Positions 1-24,015 of a stretch of DNA of 64,000 nucleotides are shown in pieces. The notes beneath the pieces are model-generated. The model was given only the letters and a program-made list of their open reading frames with translations, ran no database searches and was not told the origin of the DNA. A program made the position numbers and the translations under genes. Numbering within the stretch: the stretch's first letter is position 1; every line of letters starts with the position of its first letter. Location: the sequence record MG592671.1; one strand, written 5' to 3'.

Positions 1-449
1 ATACCATATGTGTAGTTAGCACGTCGTGTTGTATAAAGTGCACCAAGGTTTAATAACTTGATGTTGTTATAGTTCTGAAAACGAATAGCGTGACTTAGCA
101 CTACTTCAGAGTTTGCTTTCAATAACGCACCATTAAAGTTAATAGTCATATCATAAAGGTCATTGATTGTTATTGTAGTAAAGTTATAAGTCCCTGATGG
201 AAAATATATACTAGTAGGACGGCTTGTTCCGTGTATATTACTAACGTACTCAAAAGTTGCCTGAATAGCAGCAGTATCATCAGTAACGCCGTCTCCTACT
301 GCGCCAAAGTCTTTCACATTCACTACATCAGAAAACCGATCTTCCAATGTTCGTGAATCAGTGCTTCCTGTCGATATCACTGAACTATTGCTTAGTGAAG
401 CTTCTGGTAGAAGCCCCTCTGTGTTTCTAAAATTTACCTTAGTAGTCAT
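1..449 (-). CDS. tailspike/tail fibre protein, pectate-lyase-like beta-helix (5' part, runs off window edge)
   Basis: Hand-translated from ATG at 449 (AGGAG RBS): MTTKVNFRNTEGLLPEASLSNSSVISTGSTDSRTLEDRFSDVVNVKDFGAVGDGVTDDTAAIQ...IYFPSGTY; open to base 1. Confidence 0.85.
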   Translation of the reverse strand, partial: MTTKVNFRNTEGLLPEASLSNSSVISTGSTDSRTLEDRFSDVVNVKDFGAVGDGVTDDTAAIQATFEYVSNIHGTSRPTSIYFPSGTYNFTTITINDLYDMTINFNGALLKANSEVVLSHAIRFQNYNNIKLLNLGALYTTRRANYTYG

Positions 450-464
450 AATAAACTCCTAGTA

Positions 465-679
465 TTAAGAACAGATCAACAAGAATAATCCGCCGACAAC
501 TGCCCATACAAAATCCATAAATTCAGGAGTGCCATTACTAAGTGCATTCCATCCTTCTTTAGTGCTCCTATCAACGATACAATAACGGTGCTACTACAGG
601 TCAGCACCTAGTAAAGTTGTCCAGGTTCTTATCATCGCTCCTGCAATGAAGTGTTTTATCCTGCAGTGTTAATGTTCAT
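465..679 (-). pseudogene. frameshifted remnant of a small membrane protein
   Basis: ATG overlaps the upstream stop (TAATG); fragments IKHFIAGAMI / STVIVSLIGA / KEGWNALSNGTPEFMDFVWAVVGGLFLLICS* lie in different frames. Confidence 0.45.
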
Positions 680-3396
680 TATCTGACAGTTCCAGTAGCA
701 TCGCGCCAGTTAGAGCCATCCCACCAAATAGGATAGTTTAAATCAGTATCAAAATACTCATGAGATGTAGGTATATTTGCTGGTCGCTGTGCAGTCGTTC
801 CTCGGAAGTGCGTTCCTCGGTTATAGTTTCCATCTGTTCCATAAACATATATACGATTATCAGGTAGTGTTGTAATACTTGAGTTAGTTGTTGACCATGT
901 GTAGTCACTATATATGAATAGATTATTATATACAGCAGTTCCCAACTCGTAAGCGAACTCTACGTTAGTTGTGTTTGTTTCACGAATGGCGTGAATATGT
1001 ACATTATAACTCTCATTAGAACTAATATCACGTATCATATCTACCGTGCCATTGGAGCTATGGAAACACTTGAACTCAACGTTCTTTAATAATCCATCAT
1101 TTAGTACAAGTGCCATTGCTTCTGAAATTCCAGTTCCTAACTTACCTTGGAAGCTTGATTCATATAATGGATTATCAATACGAAACGAGCGCCTAATCTT
1201 CTCTGCGTGAACGTTGTCCATTATAATACGCCTGTTAGGTAGTATACCATAGAACTCTACAACATATTTCAATATATCAGCATCAGCATATGCAAGTAAG
1301 CCATTAATGTTTAAGTCGCGAACGATATCTAATAACATTGCTGAGTTTGTAAGCGGGTATAACTGTAAGTTGATGAATGTGTAGTTGGTTGATGTGTATA
1401 TTGATTCTGTTCCAGTGTTATCAAAGTAATCATTATACGGAATGCCAACTCTATCAGTAGTGGTAATTATCATAGGATAATCAGCCCTAATACCAACATC
1501 AGACCACTCGTGTGTCTCTGATGCGTAGTTATATATGCCTATACTGCCATAGTTATTATTAACTGTTGGGATACTTACTAGCGAAATGTATAGTTTGCGC
1601 AAGTTAATAAACTGACAATATTTGTTAGTATTTGTTCGTGCAAAGTAAATGCCGATAGTTGATGGAGAACTAAGTGATCCAGTAGCACTAAAGATTGAGA
1701 ACTTCTCAAGATTCACATTCTCACTTCCTGCAATTAGAATAACAGGATTATTATTGCCAGTATTACCGTAGATGATCGATCCCTGACCTCTGCTATTAAT
1801 CTTAGACTTAGCAACACCTTCAATCGTTACTGATCCATCATTTCCGTGATTGAATATTTCTAAGGATGTGTGGAAGTAGTAAGATGTTAGCTCAAATCGT
1901 AAACGACACGCATCTTCACGATCTTTGAAGTAATCCAAATACGCCTGAAGAGTTGGAGCAGTATCATATGACGAGTGGTCTAGGCACCCAAGTTGACTAA
2001 AAAGCACATCTTGGTAATTTTTAATCTCAATAGCAGTGCCGTTACCTAGATCGGCTTGAATTCCTGCTGCAACCTTAAGTGCATCAACATTACCAACAAC
2101 AATATATTCACAACCACCATATGCAATACCAACATAATCAGAAGCAGGATAGTAACTTCTAGTATGAACAGACATTCCTACAGTTAATGCGCCGGCATTA
2201 TCTATCATATCTTGATACGTGCTAAACCACGTGTTGGCATTTAAAAAACGCTCACCTAATGTTTGATTTAGTGTTGTTCCATTAGTTACTACTCCCATCT
2301 CAGCAGCATCAGACACCCATTGATTCAATGTTTTTGTAATCCCTGAGTCAGCTGATGCTGTAGAGCCACTAACATCAATAACAGAAGATGCGTAAATCTT
2401 AAAATCTATAATAGATCCTACTGGTGGGGCTGAAGTAAAACTTAAGATACCAGAACTATACGAGTAGTTATCTAATGAGCTTTGTAGCACACCGTCAATT
2501 GCCACAGTTGTTGTTGACCCTGATCCACTTGGTGCACCAGGAACAGGGAAATTGATTGTGTTTCCATCACCATTAAATTGCGCTAAACTTGGCGTAGCTG
2601 GCGGGACTGGTCTAGTAGCACCTACAACATATGGAGCAAACGCTTTTACGTCAATGTACGATTCATTTGACGGGGCTTCCTCAAACGTTACAGTATATGT
2701 ATTAGAATCATACGCCCAGTCTCGAATATATGCTTGTTGTACCCCGTTTAGCGTAATATCAATTCCGTACCCGTCAATATTAACTGGACTAGGACTATCT
2801 TCAGTGCCAGATCCTAATATAAATGCTTTTTGAACACCGTCACCTATAAAATTGTAGGTATTTGGTGCAGCGAAGCTAATATTATCTGAATTGAACGTTG
2901 CAGCAGTGTAAATATCAACAATATCTCCACTATATGCGCCAGTCGTTAGCGTAATGTCCGTACCATCAGTATTATAATCAGTAAATGGGTACTGCCTAAA
3001 GCCCCCAACAAAAACTTCATAATTTTCTGCTTGTGGGTTTCCTCCAGCAAATGGCGTTGCGAAAACAGTTTGTCCTTCAGTTGCAACGTGTCGAACATAT
3101 AAAACATCGCCGATGCTTCCGCTACCGCCAGTTCCTGCAGAATATACATTCCAGTTTCCATCTGGGGCTGATCCCATTTGTATTGGGTTTGCTGGAGCTG
3201 ATGACGGAGCATAGAACGGAACGCCGCCGGTTCCGGAGTCAAAAACGCGTATCTGGTCCGTGTCAGATACTTCAGCACCTTCTGTCCAGTACTGTACATT
3301 GTCTTTTGGTAATCCAAAAGTAGTCGCAATGGCACTCAAATATAATGAAGAATTGAACCCATTCAATCCTGAGTAAAGATCTGAGAGTTGAGTCAT
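679..3396 (-). CDS. tailspike/tail fibre protein (adaptor + 3 GDG..DGV.Q modules + beta-helix)
   Basis: ORF track 679..3423; better start MTQLSDLY at 3396 after AGGAG; ends with the common tailspike C-terminus RGTTAQRP..YFDTDLNYPIWWDGSNWRDATGT. Confidence 0.8.
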   Translation of the reverse strand: MTQLSDLYSGLNGFNSSLYLSAIATTFGLPKDNVQYWTEGAEVSDTDQIRVFDSGTGGVPFYAPSSAPANPIQMGSAPDGNWNVYSAGTGGSGSIGDVLYVRHVATEGQTVFATPFAGGNPQAENYEVFVGGFRQYPFTDYNTDGTDITLTTGAYSGDIVDIYTAATFNSDNISFAAPNTYNFIGDGVQKAFILGSGTEDSPSPVNIDGYGIDITLNGVQQAYIRDWAYDSNTYTVTFEEAPSNESYIDVKAFAPYVVGATRPVPPATPSLAQFNGDGNTINFPVPGAPSGSGSTTTVAIDGVLQSSLDNYSYSSGILSFTSAPPVGSIIDFKIYASSVIDVSGSTASADSGITKTLNQWVSDAAEMGVVTNGTTLNQTLGERFLNANTWFSTYQDMIDNAGALTVGMSVHTRSYYPASDYVGIAYGGCEYIVVGNVDALKVAAGIQADLGNGTAIEIKNYQDVLFSQLGCLDHSSYDTAPTLQAYLDYFKDREDACRLRFELTSYYFHTSLEIFNHGNDGSVTIEGVAKSKINSRGQGSIIYGNTGNNNPVILIAGSENVNLEKFSIFSATGSLSSPSTIGIYFARTNTNKYCQFINLRKLYISLVSIPTVNNNYGSIGIYNYASETHEWSDVGIRADYPMIITTTDRVGIPYNDYFDNTGTESIYTSTNYTFINLQLYPLTNSAMLLDIVRDLNINGLLAYADADILKYVVEFYGILPNRRIIMDNVHAEKIRRSFRIDNPLYESSFQGKLGTGISEAMALVLNDGLLKNVEFKCFHSSNGTVDMIRDISSNESYNVHIHAIRETNTTNVEFAYELGTAVYNNLFIYSDYTWSTTNSSITTLPDNRIYVYGTDGNYNRGTHFRGTTAQRPANIPTSHEYFDTDLNYPIWWDGSNWRDATGTVR

Positions 3397-3430: not shown

Positions 3431-3438
3431 TATTTATT
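3431..3438 (-). promoter_or_regulatory. T4-type late promoter AATAAATA
   Basis: tatttatt 35 bp upstream of the tailspike start; the same motif precedes most structural genes and a gp55 homologue is present. Confidence 0.7.
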
Positions 3439-3454: not shown

Positions 3455-3480
3455 AAGAAAAGACGCACTTAGGCGTCTTT
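3455..3480 (-). terminator. intrinsic terminator of the HNH gene
   Basis: stem aaagacgc/gcgtcttt with U-rich tail on the minus strand. Confidence 0.6.
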
Positions 3481-4248
3481 AGGTTTATTTCTGCATCTAT
3501 CAAAATGCCATCTCTGCATGGCACCTTTCTTACCTTGTTTCTCACAATGAGGACAGGTAACTTGCGGCTGTGCAGCTATTGCATCTCTTATTTTCTGCTT
3601 TGCATCTTCACTGTGAGTTTGCCCAAACATTGAATTATTTTCGCCCTTATTGGCTTCACTAATCTTATTACATGCTTCATCAGACATAGTTTTACCTTTA
3701 TGGAGCTTTGACATACGTTCTTTATGCTCCTTAGTATTAGCCCTTGCTGTCGCTTTTTCAGACATAACTGCTTTAGTTTCTTCTGTGTGTTTCTTACCGT
3801 AAAAATAGTTATTTTCACCAGTATTAGCATCTTTGATAGCTTGGATATGCTCAGCGGATAGTTTTCTACCCTTAGCCTTTTCAGATAAAATCTTCTTTGT
3901 TTCCTTAGTGTGTTTCTTTCCATAAAATGGATTATTTACGCCACTAATAGCTTCTCTTCCTGCAACATATTCATCTTCTGTAAGAGTTCTGTTATTATTT
4001 GGATCATTAGTCATCATAAACAAAGCATGAGCCATTCCTGGTGTTCTATGCCACTTAGCTAGATGGTAATGCGCCATATAATGTTCTCTAGCAGTTAAAT
4101 ACACCATGTTTTCAGCATCATCTGTGCCTCCCATTGACTTAGGGATAATATGATGATTCTCTACATAACATGGAGCTGAATCTTTTGTCCAGTCTCTGCT
4201 GGTAGCTATTTTTATTAGATTATTATATTGCTCTTCATGAGTTTGCAT
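3469..4248 (-). CDS. free-standing HNH homing endonuclease with NUMOD3 repeats
   Basis: YVENHHIIPKSMGGTDDAENMVYLTAREHYMAHYHL HNH core; repeated NPFYGKKHT.ETK (NUMOD3); C-terminal CPHC..GAMQRWHFDRC; start 4248 after AGGGAG. Confidence 0.92.
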   Translation of the reverse strand: MQTHEEQYNNLIKIATSRDWTKDSAPCYVENHHIIPKSMGGTDDAENMVYLTAREHYMAHYHLAKWHRTPGMAHALFMMTNDPNNNRTLTEDEYVAGREAISGVNNPFYGKKHTKETKKILSEKAKGRKLSAEHIQAIKDANTGENNYFYGKKHTEETKAVMSEKATARANTKEHKERMSKLHKGKTMSDEACNKISEANKGENNSMFGQTHSEDAKQKIRDAIAAQPQVTCPHCEKQGKKGAMQRWHFDRCRNKPKDA

Positions 4249-4270
4249 ACTTTTCTCCCTTGTATAATAC

Positions 4271-4280
4271 ATTATAACAT
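4271..4280 (-). promoter_or_regulatory. extended -10 promoter ATGTTATAAT (early/middle type)
   Basis: same motif upstream of clpA (26361), gp55 (51152) and the helicase-like gene (55959). Confidence 0.55.
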
Positions 4281-4316: not shown

Positions 4317-4336
4317 AAAACCCGCTAAAGCGGGTT
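4317..4336 (-). terminator. intrinsic terminator
   Basis: aacccgc-taaa-gcgggtt followed by TTTT on the minus strand, just after the tailspike stop. Confidence 0.65.
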
Positions 4337-4348: not shown

Positions 4349-6856
4349 CTAAATTAATGCTCCAAATGCCTGCCATGTTCCCGGAGACCCTGCATCTGTG
4401 CATACCCATCCTATGTTAGTAAAGGTTCCGATCGACACAGTGTATACTATATCACCTCTTTTCCAAGTTCCTGTACTTGGTGCAGAGTTATCAAATATCA
4501 CATCTCGCTGCCCAATTTTATCACGAAGTACTATTTCCGAGTTGATAATATCGCCAATATTATCCTTGAATAAAACTTTAGTTTCTAGTGATGTTCCAGT
4601 GCTTCCAATGTTAGAATCTTGTCCAGAAAAATTATTACCTTGTATAATAACATTAATAGGAGAGTTAAATGTTCTAACTGCTGCTTGAGTTGCACCAGAG
4701 CGCACACTATTTCCTATTACTCTAGTATACGCGTCGCCTACATCTAATGTTATTCCATAGTTAATATTGTTATAAGGTACTAAAGTGTTTCCGATAATAC
4801 TGTGTCCATCTTGTTGGAAGTGCAATGAACTGTTAGAGCACTGAATGCATGTTCCAGTGCCATCATCCATGCCAATATAGTTCCCTTGGATACTTTGATT
4901 GATAGAATTATTAGACATGACTATACCAGCTTGCTCACAATGATCAAGTATATTACTTTCTATGTAATTATGAGAAGAACTATCTAGCTCAATACCTCTA
5001 CCAAATGCATCAATTAGATTTCCATTGATTATCCAACCTTCCGATGCTGCTGCATCACCATGTATGTGGATACCTTGGGAAGTTGTGGATGTATTATCTC
5101 CTCCCATAGTACAATTAGTAATAAAATTATTTACGCCTTGATGTAAAGCATGCAAGCCTTTACCAGTCCTGTTCATATTACAACCAGTGATCTGTGTTGC
5201 CCACGCCCATTCAGTAACAATTGAACGACTAAACCCATCAATAAACACATTTCTAAAAACATTATAATATGGTCTATTACCTGTAGTGCCAGGAACACTA
5301 ATCCCTATATACGTATTAGGTGATATAGTATGAAGCTGATTAGAATATATTGTTAAATTTTCTATTAAGCATCCTTTTGCTCCTGCTTCAAGAACTATGC
5401 CGTGATTACCTAAGCAAATAATTGTTGTGCTGCGACTAGAATTGCCAAACATGTGCATTCCAGATGGTATAGTTAGTACATCATCTGTTAAATATGCTCC
5501 GCTTCCAATTGTCCCGTCTGGTAAATAAACAGGTTTTTTGACGGTAGCTGCATAATCTATTGCAGCTTGGATGGCAGAAGTGCTATTAGTTGAGCCATCA
5601 GGAATAGCACCAAAATCTACAACATTTACTACATCAGAAAATCTATCACCTAATGATCTAGCATGTGTTGAACCTGTCGATAAAGCATTAATATCTTCTC
5701 CATTAGTTATCCACTGCTGTAATGATTTAGAAACACCATTAGCAGTAACAGAACCAGTACCAACATCACCTAACAATGGATCCAGCACAGGTTGATATGC
5801 AGTTACATCAATCTTGGAATCTACAATAGGAACTTCATCAAAGATAATTTTATTTGATTGGACCGTAAAATCAGAGTTAGGGACTTGGTGAACACCATCA
5901 ATATAAACTGAATATGCCTCAGCAGCCAGTTGACTAGTTGTTCCAGTATCAAAGCTTGACGTTACACCATCTGCTATTTGTGATGGAGCAACTTTAGGTT
6001 GCATCACCGTAGCAGCTCCGTAAGAATTGTTCACTATCACAGTCCACAAGTCACCAACATTAAGTACGTCAGATCCGAACTCAATAACACCTGCATTAAC
6101 TGTGTATGAGCTTTCGTGTTGAACTACTCCGTTAATGCTTACGAAGCAACTATCAAATGCTCCCAAAAGAGGTGGATCAATTTGATCTAGGGTATCAGTT
6201 GGTTGCACTTCACCATCATCACGCTGTGATGAAGCTGAAACTGCAGAGATACTCCACACCTCAAAGTCCCCGTCAGGAGATACTGGATATGTAGTTGGGG
6301 AAGTACCCTCTTTTGCAATATAAGGAACCCCTTCGTAGTATCGTATTTGTCCACGAGCAAAAGTCTCATCTGATAACCACATTTGCACATCTAACGATGA
6401 TATTTCTTGAATTGTGTCCCAATATGGTACTGCCACATTTCCGTTTGGTAAAGTAAACCCTCTGTCAGTTGCAGTGTCTTCTACTACTATTGCAGTAATA
6501 CCATTACTATCTCTCGCAGTAGTATAACCTTTAGTTGTAACACGTACCCCTGGTTCTAGGCTAAATTTCTGGAGAACTTCAACAGTTTCGAATGTAAAAT
6601 CTTGGACTTGTTGCCATTCTGGCGATGTTGGTCCAGTAGCGTCCATAACTACAGGAGATATATGAGATTGTGGAGCATAGTAAACTTTGTGATTGTATAG
6701 TCGCAGATCTTCAGGGGAAGTAACAGAAACATTTGCTTCCCATGCGTCCACTGATGTCTGTCCAAATGCTGCACTTAAGATATCTTTTTCTGATTGTAAA
6801 ACTTTAGGTTCAAGATTTGCGTTACGTCCAAAGAATCCAGTAAGTTGTTGTGCCAT
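4349..6856 (-). CDS. tailspike/depolymerase (beta-helix)
   Basis: RSLGDRFSDVVNVVDFGAIPDGSTNSTSAIQAAID..VYLPDG motif, Asn-rich parallel beta-helix repeats, C-terminal GTWKRGD..GWVCT.AGSPGTW. Confidence 0.85.
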   Translation of the reverse strand: MAQQLTGFFGRNANLEPKVLQSEKDILSAAFGQTSVDAWEANVSVTSPEDLRLYNHKVYYAPQSHISPVVMDATGPTSPEWQQVQDFTFETVEVLQKFSLEPGVRVTTKGYTTARDSNGITAIVVEDTATDRGFTLPNGNVAVPYWDTIQEISSLDVQMWLSDETFARGQIRYYEGVPYIAKEGTSPTTYPVSPDGDFEVWSISAVSASSQRDDGEVQPTDTLDQIDPPLLGAFDSCFVSINGVVQHESSYTVNAGVIEFGSDVLNVGDLWTVIVNNSYGAATVMQPKVAPSQIADGVTSSFDTGTTSQLAAEAYSVYIDGVHQVPNSDFTVQSNKIIFDEVPIVDSKIDVTAYQPVLDPLLGDVGTGSVTANGVSKSLQQWITNGEDINALSTGSTHARSLGDRFSDVVNVVDFGAIPDGSTNSTSAIQAAIDYAATVKKPVYLPDGTIGSGAYLTDDVLTIPSGMHMFGNSSRSTTIICLGNHGIVLEAGAKGCLIENLTIYSNQLHTISPNTYIGISVPGTTGNRPYYNVFRNVFIDGFSRSIVTEWAWATQITGCNMNRTGKGLHALHQGVNNFITNCTMGGDNTSTTSQGIHIHGDAAASEGWIINGNLIDAFGRGIELDSSSHNYIESNILDHCEQAGIVMSNNSINQSIQGNYIGMDDGTGTCIQCSNSSLHFQQDGHSIIGNTLVPYNNINYGITLDVGDAYTRVIGNSVRSGATQAAVRTFNSPINVIIQGNNFSGQDSNIGSTGTSLETKVLFKDNIGDIINSEIVLRDKIGQRDVIFDNSAPSTGTWKRGDIVYTVSIGTFTNIGWVCTDAGSPGTWQAFGALI

Positions 6857-6892: not shown

Positions 6893-6900
6893 TATTTATT
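6893..6900 (-). promoter_or_regulatory. late promoter AATAAATA
   Basis: tatttatt 37 bp upstream of the ATG at 6856. Confidence 0.7.
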
Positions 6901-6926: not shown

Positions 6927-6957
6927 AGATAGCCCGCTGTAAACGGGCTATCTTTTT
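6927..6957. terminator. hairpin/terminator between tailspike cassettes
   Basis: stem agatagcccg/cgggctatct; T-run on the plus side only. Confidence 0.5.
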
Positions 6958-9461: not shown

Positions 9462-9469
9462 TATTTATT
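9462..9469 (-). promoter_or_regulatory. late promoter AATAAATA
   Basis: tatttatt 32 bp upstream of the ATG at 9430 (GGAGG RBS). Confidence 0.7.
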
Positions 9470-9492: not shown

Positions 9493-9517
9493 AAAAAATG
9501 CCCATCAAGGGCATTTT
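9493..9517 (-). terminator. intrinsic terminator
   Basis: aaaatgccc-atcaa-gggcatttt with a T6 tail on the minus strand. Confidence 0.7.
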
Positions 9518-13751: not shown

Positions 13752-13974
13752 TTATTATTCTCCCTTGTGGGTTTAGTCTACTGAGAACACATTAAATAGA
13801 CATTACTACGCCTATATCTGCTATTGTTCTAAGTATTTCTCAAAGTATGACAATACTGATACAGCAACACCTTGTTAGGTTATCGCTGTAGTAATTTGCA
13901 TTGAATATTTAGTTAAGTAACTTACATAATAACCTTGTTGGTCTTCACAACACTGCGTCAGCTTATATAGTTGA

Positions 13975-16282: not shown

Positions 16283-16290
16283 TATTTATC
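16283..16290 (-). promoter_or_regulatory. late promoter GATAAATA
   Basis: tatttatc 35 bp upstream of the ATG at 16248. Confidence 0.6.
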
Positions 16291-16327: not shown

Positions 16328-16352
16328 AAAAAGCCTGCGATGCAGGCTTTTT
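16328..16352 (-). terminator. intrinsic (bidirectional) terminator
   Basis: aaaaagcctgc-gat-gcaggcttttt directly after the stop at 16356. Confidence 0.8.
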
Positions 16353-16355: not shown

Positions 16356-19300
16356 TTAAGATCTTCCAGTTGGGTCATTTTGAACAGCAACATACTTTGA
16401 TCCTGACGGATACGTATTATGCAATTGTATTTGAGTTGAACTTAAAACAGTTCTCTCAGATTGGAAAATTCTTACACCATTGATGTATAAACTGAAAGGA
16501 AAATCAGTATCAACATTTGAAAGAGTTATAATTGTTTGACCAGAAGCCAAGATACTCTCTTCTTCAATTGTTGTGAAGTCCCACACTGTTCTTTGTGTTC
16601 CATCAGTATCATTTTGAGTACCAAGAATGATTGAACCGATAGGATATGAACTATTGAGTGTTATTTGGTTATTACCAGTAACAACATAATCCCCAACAAT
16701 GCCGTTTATCGACGGGTATAGCTTGATGCCATTAATAAAGAACACTGAGCTAAATGCATCACTAATGAGACTGAAATTAACAACTTGTTGGGCAGGTGTT
16801 ATCAATGTAACAGCTTCTGTGATAGAATCTACTTCGCCACTACCTGATCCACCCCCTTCACCAATACCATCAACAATCTTCCAACCAATAGTGCTATCAA
16901 TAAATGTTAATTGCACCGTTGCATTATCGAGATCTATTCTTAATGGATCAGACGCTCCCATAATAAGATCACTAAGCGATTCAATAACAATATTGTTGTC
17001 TGATGCAGTCCCTCTGTAATCTGAAACAAACAAAGTATTGTTAACTCCAGGATTAGATGGTAAAACTAACCTAACCTCTTCCACTAATGTATCAACTAAG
17101 TACGCTCCATTGGCCTCAATAACCTTGTCAATATTAGTGTATTCCCAGAATTGACTTAGGCCACCTCCAGAACCACCTTCACCAATACCATCAGTTATTT
17201 TCCACCCCATTGAGTTGTCAATGAATGTTAGTTCGATAGTAACATTGTTGAAATCAAGTATTAATTCATCTGGCAGTCCCATAATAGGCTTATCAGATAC
17301 AATTGTAATGTTATTATTAAAACAATTGCCTGAATAATCAGATATCTTAACGTTATCATTCACAGTAGGGTTTGTTGGCATTGTGATTGTGATCGGATTA
17401 TCTGCTGTAACACATTGGTAATCACCGCCTATAACAGCAACTGTGTCAGTTGTTATAGTTTCCCAATCATCACGAGATGCGCCGCCACCGCCACCTTCAC
17501 CAACACCGTTGGTTATAACCCAACCTTCAGTATCATCATCACCCATGTACGTTAGTTGAATCATTGAACGATCTAGATTAAGAACTAAGTCTTCAGCTAC
17601 ACCAACAATTGGTCTACCGTTACCTTGGATATTGATATTATTAGTTGAACATGTTCCTTTGTGGTCCATTATATTAACAATATCAAATTGGTTAGGGTTT
17701 GCAGGTAAAATGCCAGTAAACGCACTTCCTGTGGTATCTACCATATAAGCAAATGCTGCCTCTAACGCCATTGGAGTTACTGATCCAGAAACAAATTCCC
17801 AGTTATCAATTCCACTACCTCCACCAGTTCCAGAACCTGCTGTTATTTTCCAACCTTGAGTTGAATCGATGTATGTGAACGTAAGTGCAGCGTTAGCAGT
17901 TCTAATTACTTGGTCTTCTCCAAGCACTCCATTTAGTGGAGCTCCGTTAGTTTTAACAATAATGTTATTTCTAGGAGATGTTCCGTAATAGTCAGCTACC
18001 CTAACGTACGCATCCTGGAACAGTAATGCTTCATCAGGATCAGTTGGCACTGCTGGCAAAGTAACAGTAACTGGTGTATTGGACGTATCTACCATATATG
18101 ATAGGAACGGCTCCACAGGACCTGCAAATGGGTCCCACTCGTACGGTGGTATCCAGCTAACAGCATCAGAACCTGCAAATTCACCTAGACCTGATGTGAT
18201 TTTCCAACCATAGTCATCATCAATATATGTTAATTGTACCACAGCGTTTGCTGAAGATACGATTAATGCTTCGTTACTTCCCATTATAGGTGCTGGATTT
18301 GTTGGATCTCCTGTTCCTATAATAGTAATAGGATTTGCAGGACTTGTTCCGAAATAATCAGCAATCCAAACAAAATCATTTATAACACCCGGTGGCAAAG
18401 TAACAGTAACTGGCTCATTAGTTGTATCAATGTAGTAACCAGAGTTCTGTACAACAGTGACATCAGAGTTACGTGCAAACCAATCAACTGTAACAGCACC
18501 GATTTGCGATCCTAGCGGTCCCCATTGAGCACCATCAAAGCCCTCAAACTGATTAACCTCAGTATTAAAGCGCATTGCACCATCTTCGCCTATAGGACGC
18601 TCTGCAATAGTACCAGATGGCACCACAATAGCACTAGAACCTTCAAATATTACTGATGGATGATTAATATCATCATTTTGTACTGTTATCTTGCTAACGC
18701 CGTCTACTGAAACGCCTAATTTATTAACAGACGACGGGATACTTGTATCTTTACTAACTGCATATAAGCCAGTACCTTCAAGTTTTATATCATCATCACT
18801 TGGCTTGAATGAAATGCCAGGAAGTTCACTAGTTCCGTGTTCTGCATGTATTTGAGCAAATGTTTCAAAGTAATTAGCTGTTATTTCCAGATAATTATTA
18901 ACAGTATCACCTAGGCTGTTATTTGTATTTTCTCTTGTTTTGATTGAGAATATAGACCCGGCTGCATTATCAGATTCTAGTGTTACTGCATTGTTATTAG
19001 CATCAGTTTTCGAACGTAAAGCAATAGAAGGATTAAAGTTCTCGATGAAAATGTCAGCATTTCTGCTTGGGACAAAATCACCTAGGTTATTTTTAATTAT
19101 CATTGTTGGAGCTACTGACGCACCTGACACTTCTTCTAAAATAAGACCAGCGCTAGTAGTTCCTTGACGATAAAATGCACCAACAGCTTGTCCTTGCGCA
19201 GTTGCAATGATATCACCATTAGATGCAGTTGAATCTCTGTAAAAACCAGTTTGAGACCCAGTTCCAAAATATAAGCTAGGCGCAGATGCAGAACCATTAG

Positions 19301-21146
19301 GCAGTGATAGCTTAGAAGACGTACTTCCAGGCGTAGATCCTATAATTAGTGATCCGTTAACATTAACATTGTCATTAGCTGTTATTGTAGCGTTTGCCAC
19401 TACAGTATCAGTGTTATCAGTACCTAAAATTGTACTTCCAGTAACATCTAGGTTTACTAACGTTAATGTTCCTTTAACATCAAGCACACTTGTGTTGCCA
19501 ATTGTTAATGTTGCACCAGTAACCTCAACATTATCTAGAAATTCAGTAGTTCCTGCAAAAATATTGTTCTCAGTAACGTCTGCCTTAAGATCAAGCTCAG
19601 CTTGGACAGTAACGCCACCTGTTGCAGTAACTAGTGATGCTGAATAATCCCCTAAAGATGCACTATATGCACTAGTATATACTGTGCCTTGTTCACCAGT
19701 AAACGATGCAATACCTGTAGGTATCACCATACTACCGCCGATTCGGATCCATGCTCCAGAATACCACACAATACTGTCGCCAGCATCATAATTCTCAGAT
19801 GTTCCTGTGATATCGTTATTATCAGAGGCATTTACTACAATATATTCAGTGCCATCCGCAGGAGCAACGCCGTCAACACCAGTAGCATCTAAAATATCGC
19901 CATTATCAGCTGTACCATTAGATGCGTTCTGGTTTAAATCAACCGTACCTGCCACATCACGAGGTGATGTGTTAATTCCATCAAGAAAATCACTTCTTGT
20001 TACTCCAGAAAGTGTGCCACCAACGTCCATTAGCACTCTGTCTGACATTCCAGGTACAGTTGTTCCTGCAACTTCAGACATATCGATGATTAACTCGCCA
20101 GACGCATTAAATCCAAGACCACTGTTTGTTCCTGCAATATCAACAGCAATTGATTGCGGGGATCCTGCTTGAAACTCAATACCATCGCCTGCAATTGCAA
20201 TTGTGGTTAAATCTAGATTAGTTAAACTATCATTTAGTAGCTGAACACTAACTGCTTCTGTAGGCTGTGGTGACGAAGTGTTAGTGACTCCTGTTATTTC
20301 GCCAGAAACTACCACAGTTCCGTTAAGAACTGTTGGGCCGTTTGCTGTTAAAGTACCACCAACAGTTGTGCCGCTTGTTGACGCTAGTGTGGAAGCTGTC
20401 ACCCCTGATGAGCTAACTACTGAACTACCAACAACAATTTCACCATTTTGGACTGCAATATCACCATTAGCTGAAATGATGTTGCCATTTTCTAAAAAGA
20501 TATTAGAAGTGCCACTAGGGTTATTATTGTTTGTAAGTAGTAGATCACCGCTATCAATCTCAAAGTTAACCTTTGTATTTGTCACATTACTTTTAAGAAC
20601 TAGATCACCGCCTGGTGACTGGATTTCCAATTTTGATGTGCCATTGGCAATGTAAGTTTCTCTATCAACCACTTGCCAATCATTTTCAACATTACCTGAA
20701 TCTGATTTTCGAACAATGAATACTTCAGAGTTATTGTTATCCAAAGTAAGTAGAGGAGTCCCTGTATCTTCATCAATAACACTAATGTTATTAACTTCTT
20801 CGAACCCAGTACCACTAATATGAACTGAATCACCAACAAAGGCTTCTGATTGTAGGACAATCACACAATCGCCGTTTTGTGTGTTAGCAAGAATATTTTC
20901 GCCACTTACAGCAGTGTACGGGCTATCTGTGTTATCAATAACAGTCCAAGAACCGCTTACTAAAGCAACCCATGTGTATCCGTTAAATCCTTCATATATA
21001 GCTGAATCCGTGTTGAATCGGATCATGCCTGTTCGAGCACCGGTATCTGATTCAGGTCTAGCAGACTCTGGCCCTTTCGGGATCTCTAGATACTTCTCAC
21101 CACGTACTATCAGACCTTCTCGGCCATCTAAACGTTTTACGCTCAT
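16356..21146 (-). CDS. long tail fibre proximal subunit/scaffold-like protein (T4 gp34-type repeats)
   Basis: five tandem ~105-aa repeats Y.(V/I)DT....TVTLP..P...D...I.DY.G....NNI.I...GWKI.G; two GxxRFNT...EGF.G..W motifs; start MSVKRL at 21146 after GGAG. Confidence 0.65.
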   Translation of the reverse strand: MSVKRLDGREGLIVRGEKYLEIPKGPESARPESDTGARTGMIRFNTDSAIYEGFNGYTWVALVSGSWTVIDNTDSPYTAVSGENILANTQNGDCVIVLQSEAFVGDSVHISGTGFEEVNNISVIDEDTGTPLLTLDNNNSEVFIVRKSDSGNVENDWQVVDRETYIANGTSKLEIQSPGGDLVLKSNVTNTKVNFEIDSGDLLLTNNNNPSGTSNIFLENGNIISANGDIAVQNGEIVVGSSVVSSSGVTASTLASTSGTTVGGTLTANGPTVLNGTVVVSGEITGVTNTSSPQPTEAVSVQLLNDSLTNLDLTTIAIAGDGIEFQAGSPQSIAVDIAGTNSGLGFNASGELIIDMSEVAGTTVPGMSDRVLMDVGGTLSGVTRSDFLDGINTSPRDVAGTVDLNQNASNGTADNGDILDATGVDGVAPADGTEYIVVNASDNNDITGTSENYDAGDSIVWYSGAWIRIGGSMVIPTGIASFTGEQGTVYTSAYSASLGDYSASLVTATGGVTVQAELDLKADVTENNIFAGTTEFLDNVEVTGATLTIGNTSVLDVKGTLTLVNLDVTGSTILGTDNTDTVVANATITANDNVNVNGSLIIGSTPGSTSSKLSLPNGSASAPSLYFGTGSQTGFYRDSTASNGDIIATAQGQAVGAFYRQGTTSAGLILEEVSGASVAPTMIIKNNLGDFVPSRNADIFIENFNPSIALRSKTDANNNAVTLESDNAAGSIFSIKTRENTNNSLGDTVNNYLEITANYFETFAQIHAEHGTSELPGISFKPSDDDIKLEGTGLYAVSKDTSIPSSVNKLGVSVDGVSKITVQNDDINHPSVIFEGSSAIVVPSGTIAERPIGEDGAMRFNTEVNQFEGFDGAQWGPLGSQIGAVTVDWFARNSDVTVVQNSGYYIDTTNEPVTVTLPPGVINDFVWIADYFGTSPANPITIIGTGDPTNPAPIMGSNEALIVSSANAVVQLTYIDDDYGWKITSGLGEFAGSDAVSWIPPYEWDPFAGPVEPFLSYMVDTSNTPVTVTLPAVPTDPDEALLFQDAYVRVADYYGTSPRNNIIVKTNGAPLNGVLGEDQVIRTANAALTFTYIDSTQGWKITAGSGTGGGSGIDNWEFVSGSVTPMALEAAFAYMVDTTGSAFTGILPANPNQFDIVNIMDHKGTCSTNNINIQGNGRPIVGVAEDLVLNLDRSMIQLTYMGDDDTEGWVITNGVGEGGGGGASRDDWETITTDTVAVIGGDYQCVTADNPITITMPTNPTVNDNVKISDYSGNCFNNNITIVSDKPIMGLPDELILDFNNVTIELTFIDNSMGWKITDGIGEGGSGGGLSQFWEYTNIDKVIEANGAYLVDTLVEEVRLVLPSNPGVNNTLFVSDYRGTASDNNIVIESLSDLIMGASDPLRIDLDNATVQLTFIDSTIGWKIVDGIGEGGGSGSGEVDSITEAVTLITPAQQVVNFSLISDAFSSVFFINGIKLYPSINGIVGDYVVTGNNQITLNSSYPIGSIILGTQNDTDGTQRTVWDFTTIEEESILASGQTIITLSNVDTDFPFSLYINGVRIFQSERTVLSSTQIQLHNTYPSGSKYVAVQNDPTGRS

Positions 21147-21177
21147 AGTTATCTCCATAAAAGAATATTATTTAAAG

Positions 21178-21202
21178 TATTTATTCTAAGGGGGTATAAA
21201 TA
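21178..21202. promoter_or_regulatory. back-to-back divergent late promoters (AATAAATA minus; TATAAATA plus)
   Basis: tatttatt at 21178-21185 and tataaata at 21195-21202 between divergent structural genes. Confidence 0.7.
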
Positions 21203-21228
21203 CCACATACAAGTATAGGAGAACAATA

Positions 21229-22170
21229 ATGGCACTAAGATCAAGACAGATGATGCCTGATACTGGTACTGACTGGAATTATCAAGGGGATGCGGTTGAA
21301 GCTGCAGGGTTCTATGGTATAACTACAGGATCACATACAGTTGCAATCTCAACTCAAGTGTTTGTGGGAAGAGTATATTTGATGGGTACATTAGAAAATA
21401 CCCCTGAAGATGCAGACAAAAATGATGGTTGGTTTGTGATTAAACCTAAGTCAAACAACATTAGTCAAAGTGTAGTACAACTAGTATCTGACGGTGTGAC
21501 TACTGAATACACACTAAATGCTCCTGGTAACACTAACAACGTTTTTTTAACTTTTGATGGTGTTACGCAAGTACCAAACAAGGATTTCACTTATTCCGGT
21601 AATATTCTAAGCTTAGTTGAATCGCCTGCAGACGGAGTTGTTATGGCAGTTAGAATAATGGCTCCTAACTATAAACCAGAGGATTTTGGTGAGATATTTC
21701 ATGTTGAATTTGAGGGTGATGGGGTAACTACTGAATTTATGTTGAGCGACACGGTAATACCAGGAAGCACAACTAATTTGTTTGTTAATATTAACGGGGT
21801 AGTTCAAACACCTTTTACTGATTTTACTTATAGTAACGGAGTTGTTAGTTTCTTTGAAGCTCCTTCTATTACTGAAGAAGGATTGCCTAATGTGTTTATA
21901 ACAGTTTACCCTCCAAGTGGTATTTCATCAAATGAAGATTACTGGGTGCAATTTCCTGTTAATGCCACTGATCCGGATCAAGGAAATGTTATCATTTCAC
22001 CAATATATGGTCCTAGAACCACAACTACTGTTATGGGTATTTTTGAAGGAAATTACACATACATTAAAGCAATTTTAGACAGAGATTATCTAGAACCGTA
22101 TGATCCAAACATGCCACAATACAAGCTAGATGCAGTTGGATCAATTAGTAGAATTCTAGTAAACTTTTAA
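21229..22170 (+). CDS. virion structural protein with two GDGVTTEF modules
   Basis: 313-aa ORF, AGGAG RBS, late promoter; modules like those in the tailspikes. Confidence 0.65.
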   Translation: MALRSRQMMPDTGTDWNYQGDAVEAAGFYGITTGSHTVAISTQVFVGRVYLMGTLENTPEDADKNDGWFVIKPKSNNISQSVVQLVSDGVTTEYTLNAPGNTNNVFLTFDGVTQVPNKDFTYSGNILSLVESPADGVVMAVRIMAPNYKPEDFGEIFHVEFEGDGVTTEFMLSDTVIPGSTTNLFVNINGVVQTPFTDFTYSNGVVSFFEAPSITEEGLPNVFITVYPPSGISSNEDYWVQFPVNATDPDQGNVIISPIYGPRTTTTVMGIFEGNYTYIKAILDRDYLEPYDPNMPQYKLDAVGSISRILVNF

Positions 22171-22200
22171 TATATTATAACATTTATAAGGAGAAACATC

Positions 22201-24015
22201 ATGGCTCAATATTTCCATGTGTTTGATACGCTAATTGAGGCGCAGGGAGCAACATTACCAGAAGGTGTTCTAGTTAAAACAAAAGGCGGAGCAGTTGTTG
22301 GGGATGGTCAAGGAGGGGAGTATTTAACAAGCACAGGCGGTATTATAGACACTAATGCCCCGCAAGGTATACAAATTAAGGCGACTGGCACAACAACACC
22401 AAGATCACTAGCAGATAGATTTGCTGATATAATTAATGCCAAAGATTTTGGAGCTATAGGGGACGGTACTACTGACGACACTGAAGCATTAAAAGCTGCT
22501 ATAGCAGAAGCTGCAAGAGTGAATAAGCGAGTATTTCTACCAACAGGCGCGTACTATATTACAGAGACTTTGATTCTCCCTGAGCAGTGCTGGATAGAAG
22601 GTGAACTACACTTCTTTAGAACTAATGGTTCAGCATCAGAAATCGTTGTCGACACTGATATAGTAGCAATTCAATTACAAGATTACACGCTAGGACATCG
22701 ACTTGATAATCTTGTGATTCGTTATGAAGGTGAGGTAGGAACTTCCACTAAGCCAGCAGTTATAAATCAATCTTTAGAACTAAATAATAACACTACAGCT
22801 AGTATGGGCGCCCACTTCGAAAATGTATATACTAGAAGATTCTACACTGGATTTCATATAAAAGCATGGTCTTGGCAAATACGCTTGATTAACTGTTGGT
22901 CTGAGCAGCACTTTCGCAATGGCTTCTATATCCAAGGTGATTTTACATCTGCTGCGTTAGTTCAATTTCTACACTGCTCTGCCATCACAGGTGATATATC
23001 CAATAATGCTATAGGGTTTTTAGTAGAAGGAGGTAACGTTATTCTAGATAACTGTCGTATTGAAAACAATGCATACGGGCTTAGAGTAGGGTATGACGGC
23101 ACTATTGCATCTGACTCCACCGGAGCAAACGTTACTATTAATAATGGCTACTTTGAGGGAAATAGACAGAGGGATATGGAATGCCGTTACGGCTCAAGTA
23201 TCACTGCGGATTACTGTCAATTTTTACATCAGAATTCTGGACATACAACAAACTGTATTTTATTCAGTACTGGCGATACGAGTAATGGCGGTTCAATAAT
23301 TATTCAACGCATGCTTGTGAAATCCAACAATGGCAACTCATTAAGTTACTTAATGATTAACGAAGATAACTCGCACATTTGGGTGAATGATTGTGAAATC
23401 TTGGACTTGGAAAATACTATGCAGGTATCACCGTATTTCAATGGTAGGTATGGTCCTCGTTATATTGGCTTCCGTGAGCATGACTTTGAAATAAAAGGTT
23501 TAGGTCTTAACTGGCAATACGAGTATGCTAGATTACAACATACTAACGGCACTGGATGGACTCCACAATTTGTATGTGATGGTGGGACATTCCCTGCAAC
23601 TGGAGGTGAGCGTTACATACAGTATGACGCAGCAGATGAACTTATGGTAGGAGATGTAGCCACTGGTAATTGGTATTATCGAAACTATCAAAAGCGTCCT
23701 ATTGAGTACAACTCTACTCCAAATCTAGCAGGTGATACTTATAGTATGCATGATAGAGCTGGTGTAATTGCTATTCGTTTTACTGGCAACCCAAGCACAG
23801 CAACTATTACTCTCGATGAAACGACAATGGTGACAGGGGATATATTCTTTGTGACTGACGGGTTTAAAGACGGGTACGGAGATTCGTCGACAACTATTAC
23901 TATAAACGTGGATGGAAAAAGTTATGTTAACAATCCGTTAGAAACTACGTTTTTTAAAAAAGTTCAGCTTATTGGGGGCTCCACCGCCTCTAGAGTAATC
24001 TCTTGGAAAGGGTAG
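22201..24015 (+). CDS. tailspike/depolymerase (beta-helix)
   Basis: RSLADRFADIINAKDFGAIGDGTTDDTEALKAAI..VFLPTGAY; TAAGGAG RBS. Confidence 0.85.
   Translation: MAQYFHVFDTLIEAQGATLPEGVLVKTKGGAVVGDGQGGEYLTSTGGIIDTNAPQGIQIKATGTTTPRSLADRFADIINAKDFGAIGDGTTDDTEALKAAIAEAARVNKRVFLPTGAYYITETLILPEQCWIEGELHFFRTNGSASEIVVDTDIVAIQLQDYTLGHRLDNLVIRYEGEVGTSTKPAVINQSLELNNNTTASMGAHFENVYTRRFYTGFHIKAWSWQIRLINCWSEQHFRNGFYIQGDFTSAALVQFLHCSAITGDISNNAIGFLVEGGNVILDNCRIENNAYGLRVGYDGTIASDSTGANVTINNGYFEGNRQRDMECRYGSSITADYCQFLHQNSGHTTNCILFSTGDTSNGGSIIIQRMLVKSNNGNSLSYLMINEDNSHIWVNDCEILDLENTMQVSPYFNGRYGPRYIGFREHDFEIKGLGLNWQYEYARLQHTNGTGWTPQFVCDGGTFPATGGERYIQYDAADELMVGDVATGNWYYRNYQKRPIEYNSTPNLAGDTYSMHDRAGVIAIRFTGNPSTATITLDETTMVTGDIFFVTDGFKDGYGDSSTTITINVDGKSYVNNPLETTFFKKVQLIGGSTASRVISWKG

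What the first reader, a model, noticed from the sequence alone, without database searches (positions are those of the whole stretch)
1..24015. Arsenal of eight tailspike/depolymerase genes, several built as self-contained expression cassettes
Seen: eight genes (449, 3396, 6856, 9430, 11331, 13751, 16248, 22201) carry a pectate-lyase-type start motif or a beta-helix body, and the bodies look mutually dissimilar. Four have their own NATAAATA late promoter 32-37 bp upstream, and hairpins separate most cassettes. Known: multi-depolymerase phages (PhiK64-1/RaK2, CBA120) use one spike per surface polysaccharide. Inference: this is a plug-and-play multi-receptor system with potentially new polysaccharide specificities, and the cluster continues left of the window.
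Basis: partly seen in the sequence, partly recalled or inferred. Interest (0 to 1): 0.7.

Follow-up and report, generated by a model that had tools for sequence, protein, structure and literature searches.

The report
Vibrio jumbo phage tailspike arsenal
A giant marine Vibrio phage carries eight different sugar-binding tail spikes here (thirteen genome-wide), several sharing their working part with small phages that kill the same bacteria: a known broad-host-range strategy, found in a new lineage.

Summary
The window is Vibrio phage 2.275.O (MG592671.1, 348,911 bp), record 248001-312000. All eight genes exist at the stated starts and all are right-handed beta-helix tailspike-type proteins: six by Pfam PF12708, two by structure model or profile comparison. 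The bodies are mutually dissimilar. Four genes have an ATAAATA late-promoter motif 31-36 nt before the start codon. Terminator-like hairpins follow five genes.

Corrections:
- The cluster does not continue left. Only the first gene crosses the window edge, and thymidylate synthase follows it.
- One of the eight spikes is split by a single in-frame stop.
- The block also holds a 1600-aa fibre with tandem CBA120 TSP4 XD1-like repeats, an anchor-only protein and a homing endonuclease.
- Five more spike genes lie elsewhere in the genome, giving 13 in total.

Additions:
- Four long spikes share an ~85-aa N-terminal anchor.
- Spike bodies are 39-77% identical to the single receptor-binding proteins of small co-isolated Vibrio phages.
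- Four of those six small phages share a host strain with 2.275.O in published host-range data.

Verdict: a new member of the known RaK2/phiK64-1/CBA120 kind of multi-spike adsorption system. Interest is moderate.

The parts
1..449 (-). g405 (NVP2275O_405), short-N-terminus beta-helix spike, 534 aa. The gene runs 1155 nt beyond the left window edge (record 246845-248449).
   Evidence: PF12708 E 1.7e-13. Body 39% identical to the RBP of Vibrio phage 1.042.O and 38% to the 1.036.O tailspike. Left neighbour is thymidylate synthase.
679..3396 (-). g406, long spike (905 aa from the Met at 3396; GenBank start 3423): shared N-terminal anchor, beta-sandwich modules, beta-helix body.
   Evidence: No Pfam hit. 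Body residues 380-914 are 77% identical to gp03 of Vibrio phage 1.253.O. Model and Foldseek give the tailspike fold. The C-terminus matches CBA120 TSP3. Anchor alignment A3.
3431..3438 (-). Late-promoter motif of g406
3459..3480 (-). Terminator-like hairpin at the end of g407
3469..4272 (-). g407, free-standing HNH/NUMOD3 homing endonuclease inserted between two spike cassettes
   Evidence: NUMOD3 E 1.4e-40 and HNH. PHROG homing endonuclease E 4e-52.
4319..4336 (-). Hairpin after g408
   Evidence: dG -10.4
4349..6856 (-). g408, long spike, 835 aa. The body has no close relative.
   Evidence: PF12708, NosD and Beta_helix hits. Sf6 tailspike 2vbe E 9e-13. Best phage hits are <=28% identical.
6893..6900 (-). 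Late-promoter motif of g408
6927..6953 (-). Terminator-like hairpin after g409
   Evidence: dG -18.1
6956..9430 (-). g409, long spike, 824 aa
   Evidence: PF12708 E 9e-17 and Beta_helix E 7e-11. Body 277-823 is 56.6% identical to a Vibrio phage Vc1 protein. The anchor is shared with a Tara Oceans protein that carries an unrelated body.
9462..9469 (-). Late-promoter motif of g409
9495..9517 (-). Terminator-like hairpin after the split spike
9745..11331 (-). Split short-N-terminus spike (annotated as NVP2275O_411 plus 410): one beta-helix body interrupted by one in-frame stop codon, no frameshift.
   Evidence: One colinear tblastn alignment of 468 columns, 46% identity, to the single 814-aa gp44 of Vibrio phage 1.201.B. 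One internal stop in the shared frame. PF12708 E 1.3e-13.
11331..11465 (-). g412, 44-aa ORF overlapping the start of the split spike; function unknown
   Evidence: No Pfam or PHROG hit
11790..13751 (-). g413, short-N-terminus spike, 653 aa (GenBank start 13736)
   Evidence: No Pfam, PHROG or PDB sequence hit. 82 representative relatives, best 39% identical. Model pLDDT 91.7 with HK620 tailspike as top fold match. hhalign to g409 95%. A relative sits after gpJ in a V. cholerae prophage.
13975..16248 (-). g414, long spike, 757 aa
   Evidence: PF12708. phiAB6 tailspike 5js4 E 1e-23. Body 268-755 is 74.7% identical to gp35 of Vibrio phage 1.178.O, up to 90% in the central helix.
16283..16290 (-). 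Late-promoter motif of g414
16328..16352 (-). Terminator-like hairpin after g415
   Evidence: dG -14.1
16356..21158 (-). g415, 1600-aa non-enzymatic fibre, the candidate stem or hub: four tandem ~107-113-aa repeats of the CBA120 TSP4 XD1-type domain (about residues 1100-1440). The C-terminus resembles the anchor modules of g409.
   Evidence: PDB 7rfv/7rej/7rfo E 1.5e-9 to 8.5e-9. These entries are CBA120 TSP4-N. Tandem DNA repeats. PHROG tail-protein families with 3-5 stretches. g415 1443-1598 matches g409 87-244.
21178..21185 (-). Late-promoter motif of g415
21195..21202 (+). Late-promoter motif of the divergent g416-g417 unit
21229..22170 (+). g416, 313-aa protein built only of the beta-sandwich modules found in the long spikes' N-terminal regions, with no body; a candidate adaptor
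   Evidence: BLASTP to g414 72-228 and g406 223-335. PHROG virion structural protein and tail fiber families.
22201..24015 (+). g417, spike with a ~75-aa N-terminus, 604 aa, 30 nt after g416 and without its own promoter motif. The body has no close relative.
   Evidence: PF12708 E 3.4e-12. Best phage hits are <=34% identical, at the helix start only. The N-terminus resembles g208 of the second cluster.
24070..24099 (+). Bidirectional terminator-like hairpin closing the cluster, between g417 and the convergent ClpB-like gene
   Evidence: dG -21.3

Best explanation
The block encodes most of the host-recognition apparatus of a jumbo myovirus: a set of different trimeric beta-helix tailspikes, each expected to bind and probably cleave a different surface polysaccharide of Vibrio strains.

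Shown by computation:
- All eight proteins have the tailspike beta-helix fold and mutually unrelated bodies.
- They fall into two N-terminal classes.
- Four long spikes (g406, g408, g409, g414) share an ~85-aa N-terminal domain followed by repeated beta-sandwich modules. Each has its own ATAAATA motif, ribosome-binding site and, mostly, a terminator.
- Four short spikes (g405, the split one, g413, g417) begin the helix 15-77 residues from the start, have no promoter motif of their own, and lie directly downstream of a long spike or of the anchor-only protein g416.
- g415 is a 1600-aa fibre with four tandem TSP4 XD1-type repeats.
- The spike bodies, but not the anchors, are 39-77% identical to the single receptor-binding proteins of small sipho-, podo- and myoviruses isolated at the same site on the same host species. 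The homology starts at the helix-start motif.

Inferred:
- The genes are transcribed late from a T4-like late promoter, as proposed for other RaK2-like phages.
- g415 forms the stem that is fixed to the baseplate. The long spikes dock by their shared anchor, on g415 or on the baseplate wedge. The short spikes ride on partners encoded in the same transcription unit.
- Bodies are gained by recombination at the conserved helix-start motif, so the phage pools the specificities of several narrow-range phages.
- Published host-range data fit this. 2.275.O kills 7 strains of 7 hsp60 types and shares a host with four of the six Nahant phages whose spike body is homologous to one of its own.
For: - Identity and annotation.
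- Fold.
- Dissimilar bodies.
- Shared anchor. The same anchor (51% identity) carries an unrelated body in a Tara Oceans protein.
- g415 repeats and their match to CBA120 TSP4-N.
- Promoter motif: it is depleted in the window yet always upstream of genes. The same ATAAATA motif is reported before structural genes of the RaK2-like phages CBB and GAP32 (PMC5259590). The phage encodes two sigma-factor-like genes.
- Terminators.
- Position next to the baseplate and tail genes.
- Body homologues: 1.253.O 77%, 1.178.O 75%, Vc1 57%, 1.201.B 46%, 1.042.O and 1.036.O 38-39%.
- Raised GC3 in g413, the split spike and the g414 body (0.32-0.40 against ~0.25 in core genes) fits recent import.
- Host sharing with 1.178.O, 1.253.O, 1.036.O and 1.042.O, from the source data of PMC8766483. 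Hypergeometric P is 7e-6 to 4e-4.
- The RaK2 and CBA120 precedents: PMC10253068 and PMC8825819.
Against: - There is no direct evidence that any of these proteins is in the virion or is enzymatically active. Catalytic residues were not identified.
- Only the XD1-type domain, described as a spacer in CBA120, was detected in g415. The XD2/XD3 docking domains and the D1/D2 head domains of CBA120/RaK2 spikes were not found in the window proteins.
- The shared anchor has only a marginal match to a solved baseplate-bound fibre (phiTE, E 6.6e-4). Who docks on whom is therefore conjecture.
- Thirteen spikes contrast with only seven killed strains.
- Three host-sharing phages (1.202.O, 1.256.O, 1.265.O) have no receptor-binding protein homologous to any 2.275.O spike.
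- The host-sharing statistic is post hoc and the published table was truncated in the copy I read.
- One spike is interrupted by a stop and no suppressor tRNA exists.
- The g406 model is of moderate confidence and TM-scores are low (0.28-0.44).
Confidence: 0.75

Rival explanations
1. Only the four long, anchor-bearing spikes, with g415 and g416, are virion parts. The short-N-terminus beta-helix proteins (g405, the split one, g413, g417, and g205-208 and g380 elsewhere) would be free, non-structural depolymerases released at lysis, or decorations at other sites of the particle such as the tail surface.
For: - Their N-termini are very short: 12-77 residues before the helix.
- In the window they lack promoter motifs of their own.
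- g380 sits next to the tail sheath gene and g205-208 sit among early or metabolic genes, far from the baseplate genes.
- A RaK2-like relative, CBB, carries unexplained tail whiskers (PMC5259590).
Against: - Several short spikes begin with the same conserved short peptide (MTT[K/R]V..N), which suggests a docking role.
- Their bodies are homologous to the sole virion receptor-binding proteins of small phages.
- Three of the five spike genes outside the window (g206, g208, g380) carry the late-promoter motif within 45 nt of the start; g207 has it at -70 and g205 has none.
- In Klebsiella podoviruses, second spikes dock through a short conserved N-terminal peptide (abstract of PMC13352976).
Confidence: 0.2
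2. The cluster is largely an archive. Spikes are captured by recombination faster than they are lost, and only a few are in use, so most contribute nothing to the present host range.
For: - One spike is split by a stop.
- A homing endonuclease sits inside the block.
- There are 13 spike genes but only 7 killed strains.
- GC3 is not yet adapted in three bodies.
Against: - Twelve of the 13 genes are intact open reading frames of 500-900 codons. In the window they have ribosome-binding sites, promoters or operon positions.
- Host sharing tracks spike homology for four phages.
- The strain panel tested was limited to one site and season.
Confidence: 0.15
3. The beta-helix bodies are binding modules or enzymes of another kind (deacetylases, epimerase-like), not glycan-cleaving depolymerases.
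For: - PF12708 and the PDB sequence hits include mannuronan C5-epimerases, adhesins (PfbA) and glucanases as well as tailspikes.
- No catalytic residues were verified.
Against: - The best structural and sequence matches are hydrolytic or lytic tailspikes: Sf6, HK620, phiAB6, CBA120 TSP2/3, K2 depolymerases and RbmB lyase.
- Seven of the nine RaK2 long-tail-fibre proteins are reported to be depolymerases (abstract of PMC10253068).
Confidence: 0.1

Closest known systems
Adsorption complex of Klebsiella jumbo phages RaK2 / phiK64-1 (Alcyoneusvirus) and phiKp24
   Same: - Jumbo myoviruses of the same broad group. The core tail protein is 37-41% identical.
- A gene block of many different beta-helix spikes beside tail and baseplate genes.
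- Spikes have modular N-terminal regions. One long protein carries several TSP4-like XD domains.
- ATAAATA-type late promoter, reported in the relatives CBB and GAP32.
   Different: - No spike or anchor here is detectably homologous to RaK2 proteins beyond the XD1-type repeats and the generic helix-start motif.
- D1/D2 head domains were not detected.
- Many spikes have N-termini of only 12-77 residues.
- The spikes are spread over three loci, 13 in all.
- The host is a marine Vibrio.
- Nothing has been shown experimentally.
CBA120 (Kuttervirus) TSP1-4 branched tailspike complex
   Same: - Several spikes of different specificity are assembled on a protein with T4 gp10-like XD domains.
- g415 matches the TSP4-N crystal structures (7rej, 7rfo, 7rfv) at E ~1e-9.
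- The C-terminus of g406 matches TSP3.
   Different: - The match covers the XD1 region only, repeated four times in tandem. XD2/XD3, the domains shown to bind partner spikes, were not detected.
- g415 has no beta-helix body of its own.
- The spike N-termini are a different family.
Two-spike systems of Klebsiella podoviruses (KP32, K11, KP34): anchor spike with a branching domain plus a second spike with a short docking peptide
   Same: - Short spikes start with a conserved short N-terminal peptide.
- They are encoded directly after a longer anchor-bearing partner (abstract of PMC13352976).
   Different: - No sequence similarity was tested or found to those peptides or branching domains.
- The pairing here is inferred only from gene order and the absence of promoters.
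Single tailspikes of small Nahant-collection Vibrio phages (1.178.O gp35, 1.253.O gp03, 1.201.B gp44, 1.042.O gp53, 1.036.O tailspike) and Vibrio phage Vc1
   Same: The beta-helix bodies are homologous over their full length, 38-77% identical and up to 90% in the central helix of g414. The host species is the same, and for four of them a host strain is shared.
   Different: - The N-terminal attachment parts are unrelated.
- Those phages carry one spike each and mostly kill one to four strains.

Membership tests
Right-handed parallel beta-helix tailspike / depolymerase (pectate-lyase fold) | Beta-helix fold with the N-terminal cap or start motif (Pfam PF12708 / PF13229) | tested here: met
   PF12708 is above its cut-off in six of eight. 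g413 is met by a high-confidence model plus Foldseek and hhalign at 95%. g406 is met by a moderate model plus Foldseek.
Right-handed parallel beta-helix tailspike / depolymerase (pectate-lyase fold) | Separate N-terminal particle-attachment module | tested here: inconclusive
   Four spikes share an ~85-aa N-terminal domain that matches no Pfam family and only marginally a phiTE baseplate fibre (E 6.6e-4). Four have only 15-77 residues before the helix.
Right-handed parallel beta-helix tailspike / depolymerase (pectate-lyase fold) | Glycan-cleaving active site (paired acidic residues in the groove) and activity | not testable with these tools
   No residue-level mapping was possible. Only fold-level similarity to active enzymes was found.
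Right-handed parallel beta-helix tailspike / depolymerase (pectate-lyase fold) | Presence in the virion as a trimer | not testable with these tools
   No proteome or micrograph of this phage was found in the literature.
Branched multi-tailspike adsorption complex (CBA120 / RaK2 type) | Several different spike genes clustered with baseplate or tail genes | tested here: met
   Eight spike genes lie in 24 kb, followed by the tail sheath stabiliser, baseplate hub and wedge genes.
Branched multi-tailspike adsorption complex (CBA120 / RaK2 type) | T4 gp10-like XD domains on a hub protein | tested here: inconclusive
   The XD1-type region is matched in g415 (E 1.5e-9) and repeated four times. XD2/XD3, the partner-binding domains (PMC8825819), were not detected.
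Branched multi-tailspike adsorption complex (CBA120 / RaK2 type) | D1/D2 head domains (Pfam PF18668 Tail_spike_N) at the spike N-termini | tested here: not met
   There is no PF18668 hit in any window protein, even at E <= 1. It occurs in 6 of 63 distant relatives of g413.
Branched multi-tailspike adsorption complex (CBA120 / RaK2 type) | Physically branched fibres at the baseplate | not testable with these tools
   This needs micrographs or cryo-EM of the particle.
RaK2-like jumbo myoviruses | Homologous core structural genes and a genome of about 350 kb | tested here: met
   The genome is 348,911 bp. The tail sheath stabiliser is 37-41% identical over 97-99% of its length to EJP2, XaC1, GAP32, CBB, RaK2 and K64-1. 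No close relative exists.
T4-type late promoter | TATAAATA-like box at a fixed short distance upstream of late (structural) genes | tested here: met
   There are 15 ATAAATA sites in 64 kb (expected 29.9). All lie upstream of genes and 12 are 19-39 nt from the start codon. The same motif is reported for CBB and GAP32.
T4-type late promoter | Transcription starts there late in infection, driven by a phage sigma factor | not testable with these tools
   Two phage sigma-factor-like genes exist. No transcript data are available.

The most novel reading that the evidence does not exclude
The phage may use a two-tier docking code not described for RaK2 or CBA120. In it, four long spikes share one anchor domain. 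Nine short spikes carry only a 6-10-residue conserved N-terminal peptide (or a ~75-aa module), and each rides on the partner encoded just upstream in the same transcription unit. The helix-start motif is conserved even at the nucleotide level: 63-81% identity over the full-length copies (up to 89% over a 35-nt stretch) among the phage's own spikes, and 72-84% to spikes of many other phages. It would act as a universal recombination joint. Through it the jumbo phage would capture receptor-binding bodies from sipho-, podo- and myoviruses that infect the same hosts.
Probability: 0.3. Interest if true: 0.65.

Novelty: new member of a known kind. Interest (0 to 1): 0.5.

Why it matters
Multi-depolymerase jumbo phages are so far known in detail only for Klebsiella and a few other enterobacteria. 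This is a marine Vibrio example from a collection in which 248 co-isolated phages and their hosts have been sequenced and cross-tested. The idea that each spike adds one host type can therefore be checked against natural data.

Spike bodies shared at 39-77% identity with narrow-range phages of three morphotypes, together with the matching pattern of shared hosts, give a concrete picture of how a generalist phage may be assembled from specialists in the wild.

g408 and g417, whose bodies have no relative above ~30% identity (g413's best relative is 39% identical), may recognise uncharacterised Vibrio polysaccharides.

Tried and rejected
- **Close relatives for cassette comparison.** Megablast against 50,697 phage records finds only the phage itself. 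An IMG/VR scan with g415 found nothing. The word-index protein search with the g409 anchor found a single relative, on a 3.3-kb Tara scaffold.
- **Read-through of the split spike.** I looked for a suppressor tRNA over the whole genome. ARAGORN finds 18 tRNAs and none reads a stop codon. GenBank's 116-nt 'tRNA-OTHER, anticodon TTA' is not confirmed and would not match this stop type. Rejected.
- **g412 as a frameshifted N-terminal piece of the split spike.** Rejected. The split spike starts with the same peptide and upstream ribosome-binding region as g405, and the comparator's N-terminus leaves no trace upstream.
- **Pfam at E <= 1 on all N-terminal regions.** Only sub-threshold Phage_T7_tail-like hits.
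- **g406-family against g413-family profile comparison.** Probability 11%, not informative.
- **Rfam on the cluster.** Nothing.
- **Nested plus-strand ORFs of 115-171 aa.** No family hits; treated as spurious.
- **Host-sharing phages 1.202.O, 1.256.O and 1.265.O.** No similarity to any 2.275.O spike. 1.184.A shows only 27% identity to g206.
- **Published host-sharing table.** It is truncated in the stored copy, so the full list of phages sharing hosts with 2.275.O could not be read.
- **Sigma-70 promoter scan.** No excess over shuffles (59 found against 63.9 expected).

Full report
**Identity and setting.** The first 24.1 kb of the window are 100% identical to record positions 248001-272100 of Vibrio phage 2.275.O._10N.286.54.E11 (MG592671.1, 348,911 bp). 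This is a myovirus isolated on Vibrio cyclitrophicus at Nahant, and no other phage record matches beyond ~80 nt. GenBank already labels most of the genes 'pectin lyase fold' or 'parallel beta-helix'. No paper in the library discusses this cluster. A core tail protein just right of the cluster is 37-41% identical over its whole length to the RaK2, K64-1, GAP32, CBB, Munch and XaC1 group. The phage is therefore a lone, distant Vibrio member of the RaK2-like jumbo phages. The cluster is followed by the tail sheath stabiliser, baseplate hub and wedge genes.

**The observation.**
- All eight start coordinates are gene starts. Similarity to the other long spikes begins exactly at that Met and a strong ribosome-binding site precedes it.
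- Pfam PF12708, the helix-start motif, is significant in six genes.
- g406 has no Pfam hit. A model of its body (pLDDT 69.5) matches only phage tailspikes in the PDB, and its C-terminus matches CBA120 TSP3 by sequence.
- g413 has no Pfam, PHROG or PDB sequence hit. An exhaustive search gave 82 relatives. The resulting model (pLDDT 91.7, pTM 0.89) matches the HK620 and Sf6 tailspikes and the V. cholerae lyase RbmB. Its family profile aligns with the g409 helix at 95% probability.
- Body-to-body similarity is absent. Only the 40-130-aa start motif (30-54% identity) and N-terminal modules are shared.

**Promoters and terminators.**
- ATAAATA occurs 15 times in the window, against 29.9 +/- 5.2 in shuffles. 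Every copy lies upstream of a gene in the right orientation, and 12 are 19-39 nt before the start codon.
- In the cluster the motif precedes g406, g408, g409 and g414 by 34, 36, 31 and 34 nt, and also precedes g415 and g416.
- The same motif was proposed as the late promoter of the RaK2-like phages CBB and GAP32 (PMC5259590). The phage has two sigma-factor-like genes.
- Terminator-like hairpins with G+C-rich stems and flanking A/T runs follow g415, the split spike, g409, g408, g407 and g417.
- The likely transcription units are g415; g414 through the split spike; g409; g408; g407, whose transcription signals were not resolved; g406-g405; and, divergently, g416-g417. These units are inferred, not shown.

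- The cluster does not continue left. g405 ends 1155 nt beyond the edge and thymidylate synthase follows on the other strand.
- The gene starting at 11331 is part of a spike interrupted by one in-frame stop codon, with no frameshift. A single colinear alignment (468 columns, 46% identity, outer bounds 9772-11169) joins it and the next annotated ORF to the single 814-aa gp44 of Vibrio phage 1.201.B. No suppressor tRNA exists among the 18 tRNAs.
- The block also contains g415, g416 and an HNH/NUMOD3 homing endonuclease.

**Anatomy.**
- Four long spikes share an ~85-aa N-terminal domain with invariant positions (alignment A3), followed by repeated beta-sandwich modules. These modules also make up g416 and the C-terminus of g415.
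- g415 (1600 aa) has four tandem 107-113-aa repeats. They match the crystal structures of CBA120 TSP4-N over its XD1 region (E ~1e-9).
- XD2/XD3, the domains shown to bind partner spikes, were not detected. PF18668 head domains were not detected either.
- The short spikes start the helix 15-77 residues from the N-terminus. g405 and the split spike begin with the same peptide and a similar upstream region.

**Modularity and origin of the bodies.** Each body has its closest relative in a different small phage.
- g406: 77% to 1.253.O gp03.
- g414: 74.7% to 1.178.O gp35, up to 90% in the central helix and 73.6% at nucleotide level.
- g409: 56.6% to Vc1.
- The split spike: 46% to 1.201.B.
- g405: 38-39% to 1.042.O and 1.036.O.
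- g413: 36-39% to prophage spikes, one of which lies after gpJ in V. cholerae.
- g408 and g417: no relative above ~30%.

In each case homology begins at the helix-start motif and the N-terminal parts are unrelated. Conversely, a Tara Oceans protein has the g409 anchor (51% identity over 271 residues) joined to an unrelated body. The start motif is conserved at nucleotide level among the phage's own spikes (63-81% over the full-length copies, 89% over one 35-nt stretch) and in 106 phage records. GC3 is raised in g413, the split spike and the g414 body (0.32-0.40 against ~0.25 in core genes).

**Whole-genome view.** I fetched the rest of the record. A profile of the start motif finds five further spike genes. 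Four form a second cluster, g205-208 (record 119023-126300), and g380 (227156-228745) lies beside the tail sheath gene. All are confirmed as beta-helix and tail-spike families, except g205, which spans two loci and was only scanned locally. With g406 and g413 the arsenal is 13 genes.

**Link to published host range.**
- In the supplementary data of Kauffman et al. 2022 (PMC8766483), 2.275.O kills 7 strains of 7 hsp60 types in two named species.
- It shares one host each with 1.036.O, 1.042.O, 1.178.O, 1.184.A, 1.202.O, 1.253.O, 1.256.O and 1.265.O.
- Four of these eight carry a body homologous to a 2.275.O spike.
- Of the six Nahant phages with full-length body homology, four share a host with 2.275.O. 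1.201.B, whose homologue here is split, shares its only host with no phage.
- The overlap is unlikely by chance (P 7e-6 to 4e-4). It is post hoc, however, and the stored table was truncated.
- 1.202.O, 1.256.O and 1.265.O show no homology.

**Interpretation and limits.** The evidence supports a multi-spike adsorption apparatus of the kind known from RaK2, phiK64-1 and CBA120 (PMC10253068; PMC8825819). Its parts are not homologous to those systems beyond XD1-type repeats and the generic helix start. Still untested: virion incorporation, trimer docking order, enzymatic activity, and the role of the helix-start motif as a recombination joint.

Noticed in passing
outside the window: record 119023-126300 (L012/L011) and 227156-228745 (L009:41156-42745): There is a second cluster of four beta-helix spike genes (NVP2275O_205-208) among early or metabolic genes, and a solitary one (NVP2275O_380) next to the tail sheath gene. 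All have short N-termini. The ATAAATA motif precedes g206, g207, g208 and g380 (28-70 nt upstream); g205 has none.
   Followed up: partly
window 31495-42810 (-) and 42902-46765 (-): A giant 3771-aa ORF (NVP2275O_424) with its own ATAAATA motif, followed by a 1287-aa protein annotated with a carbohydrate-binding module 5/12. They lie between the spike cluster and the baseplate hub genes and may be further fibre or baseplate parts.
   Followed up: no
window 3469-4272 (-): A free-standing HNH endonuclease with three NUMOD3 motifs sits between two spike cassettes, bracketed by hairpins. Homing endonucleases can promote exchange of flanking DNA.
   Followed up: partly
window 24105-26321 (-): A ClpB/ClpA-like two-ring AAA+ chaperone gene converges on the last spike gene and shares a strong bidirectional terminator with it. 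The phage also carries several ClpP-like genes, GroEL and GroES elsewhere.
   Followed up: no
window 9745-15450: A contiguous stretch (the g414 body, g413, the split spike) has GC3 of 0.32-0.40 against about 0.25 in core genes and in the spike anchors, as if imported more recently.
   Followed up: partly
record 171224-171339 (L010:1224-1339): GenBank annotates a 116-nt 'tRNA-OTHER, anticodon TTA'. ARAGORN does not call it, nor the annotated tRNA-Ser (ACT), but it does call an unannotated tRNA-Val (AAC) at record 189306-189378.
   Followed up: partly
L014 (Tara Oceans scaffold, ENA ERZ28654009), 604-3237: An 877-aa protein has the same N-terminal anchor as g409 (51% identity) and an unrelated C-terminal part. 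It is the only other carrier of this anchor found, and hints at uncultured relatives of this phage in the open ocean.
   Followed up: partly
window 8525-8596, 5556-5693, 15359-15496, 250-387: The helix-start motif is recognisable at DNA level among four spikes of the phage (63-81% over 72-138 nt, 89% over 35 nt between g405 and g414). It is also recognisable in spike genes of Vibrio, Streptococcus, Pseudomonas and Salmonella phages.
   Followed up: partly
window 11331-11465 (-): A 44-aa ORF whose stop overlaps the start codon of the split spike. It has no relatives or family hits and follows a 324-nt gap without a promoter motif.
   Followed up: partly
record 73729-74841 and 214316-215515: Two phage-encoded sigma-factor-like genes (PHROG 351). 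Either could be the factor that reads the ATAAATA promoters.
   Followed up: no
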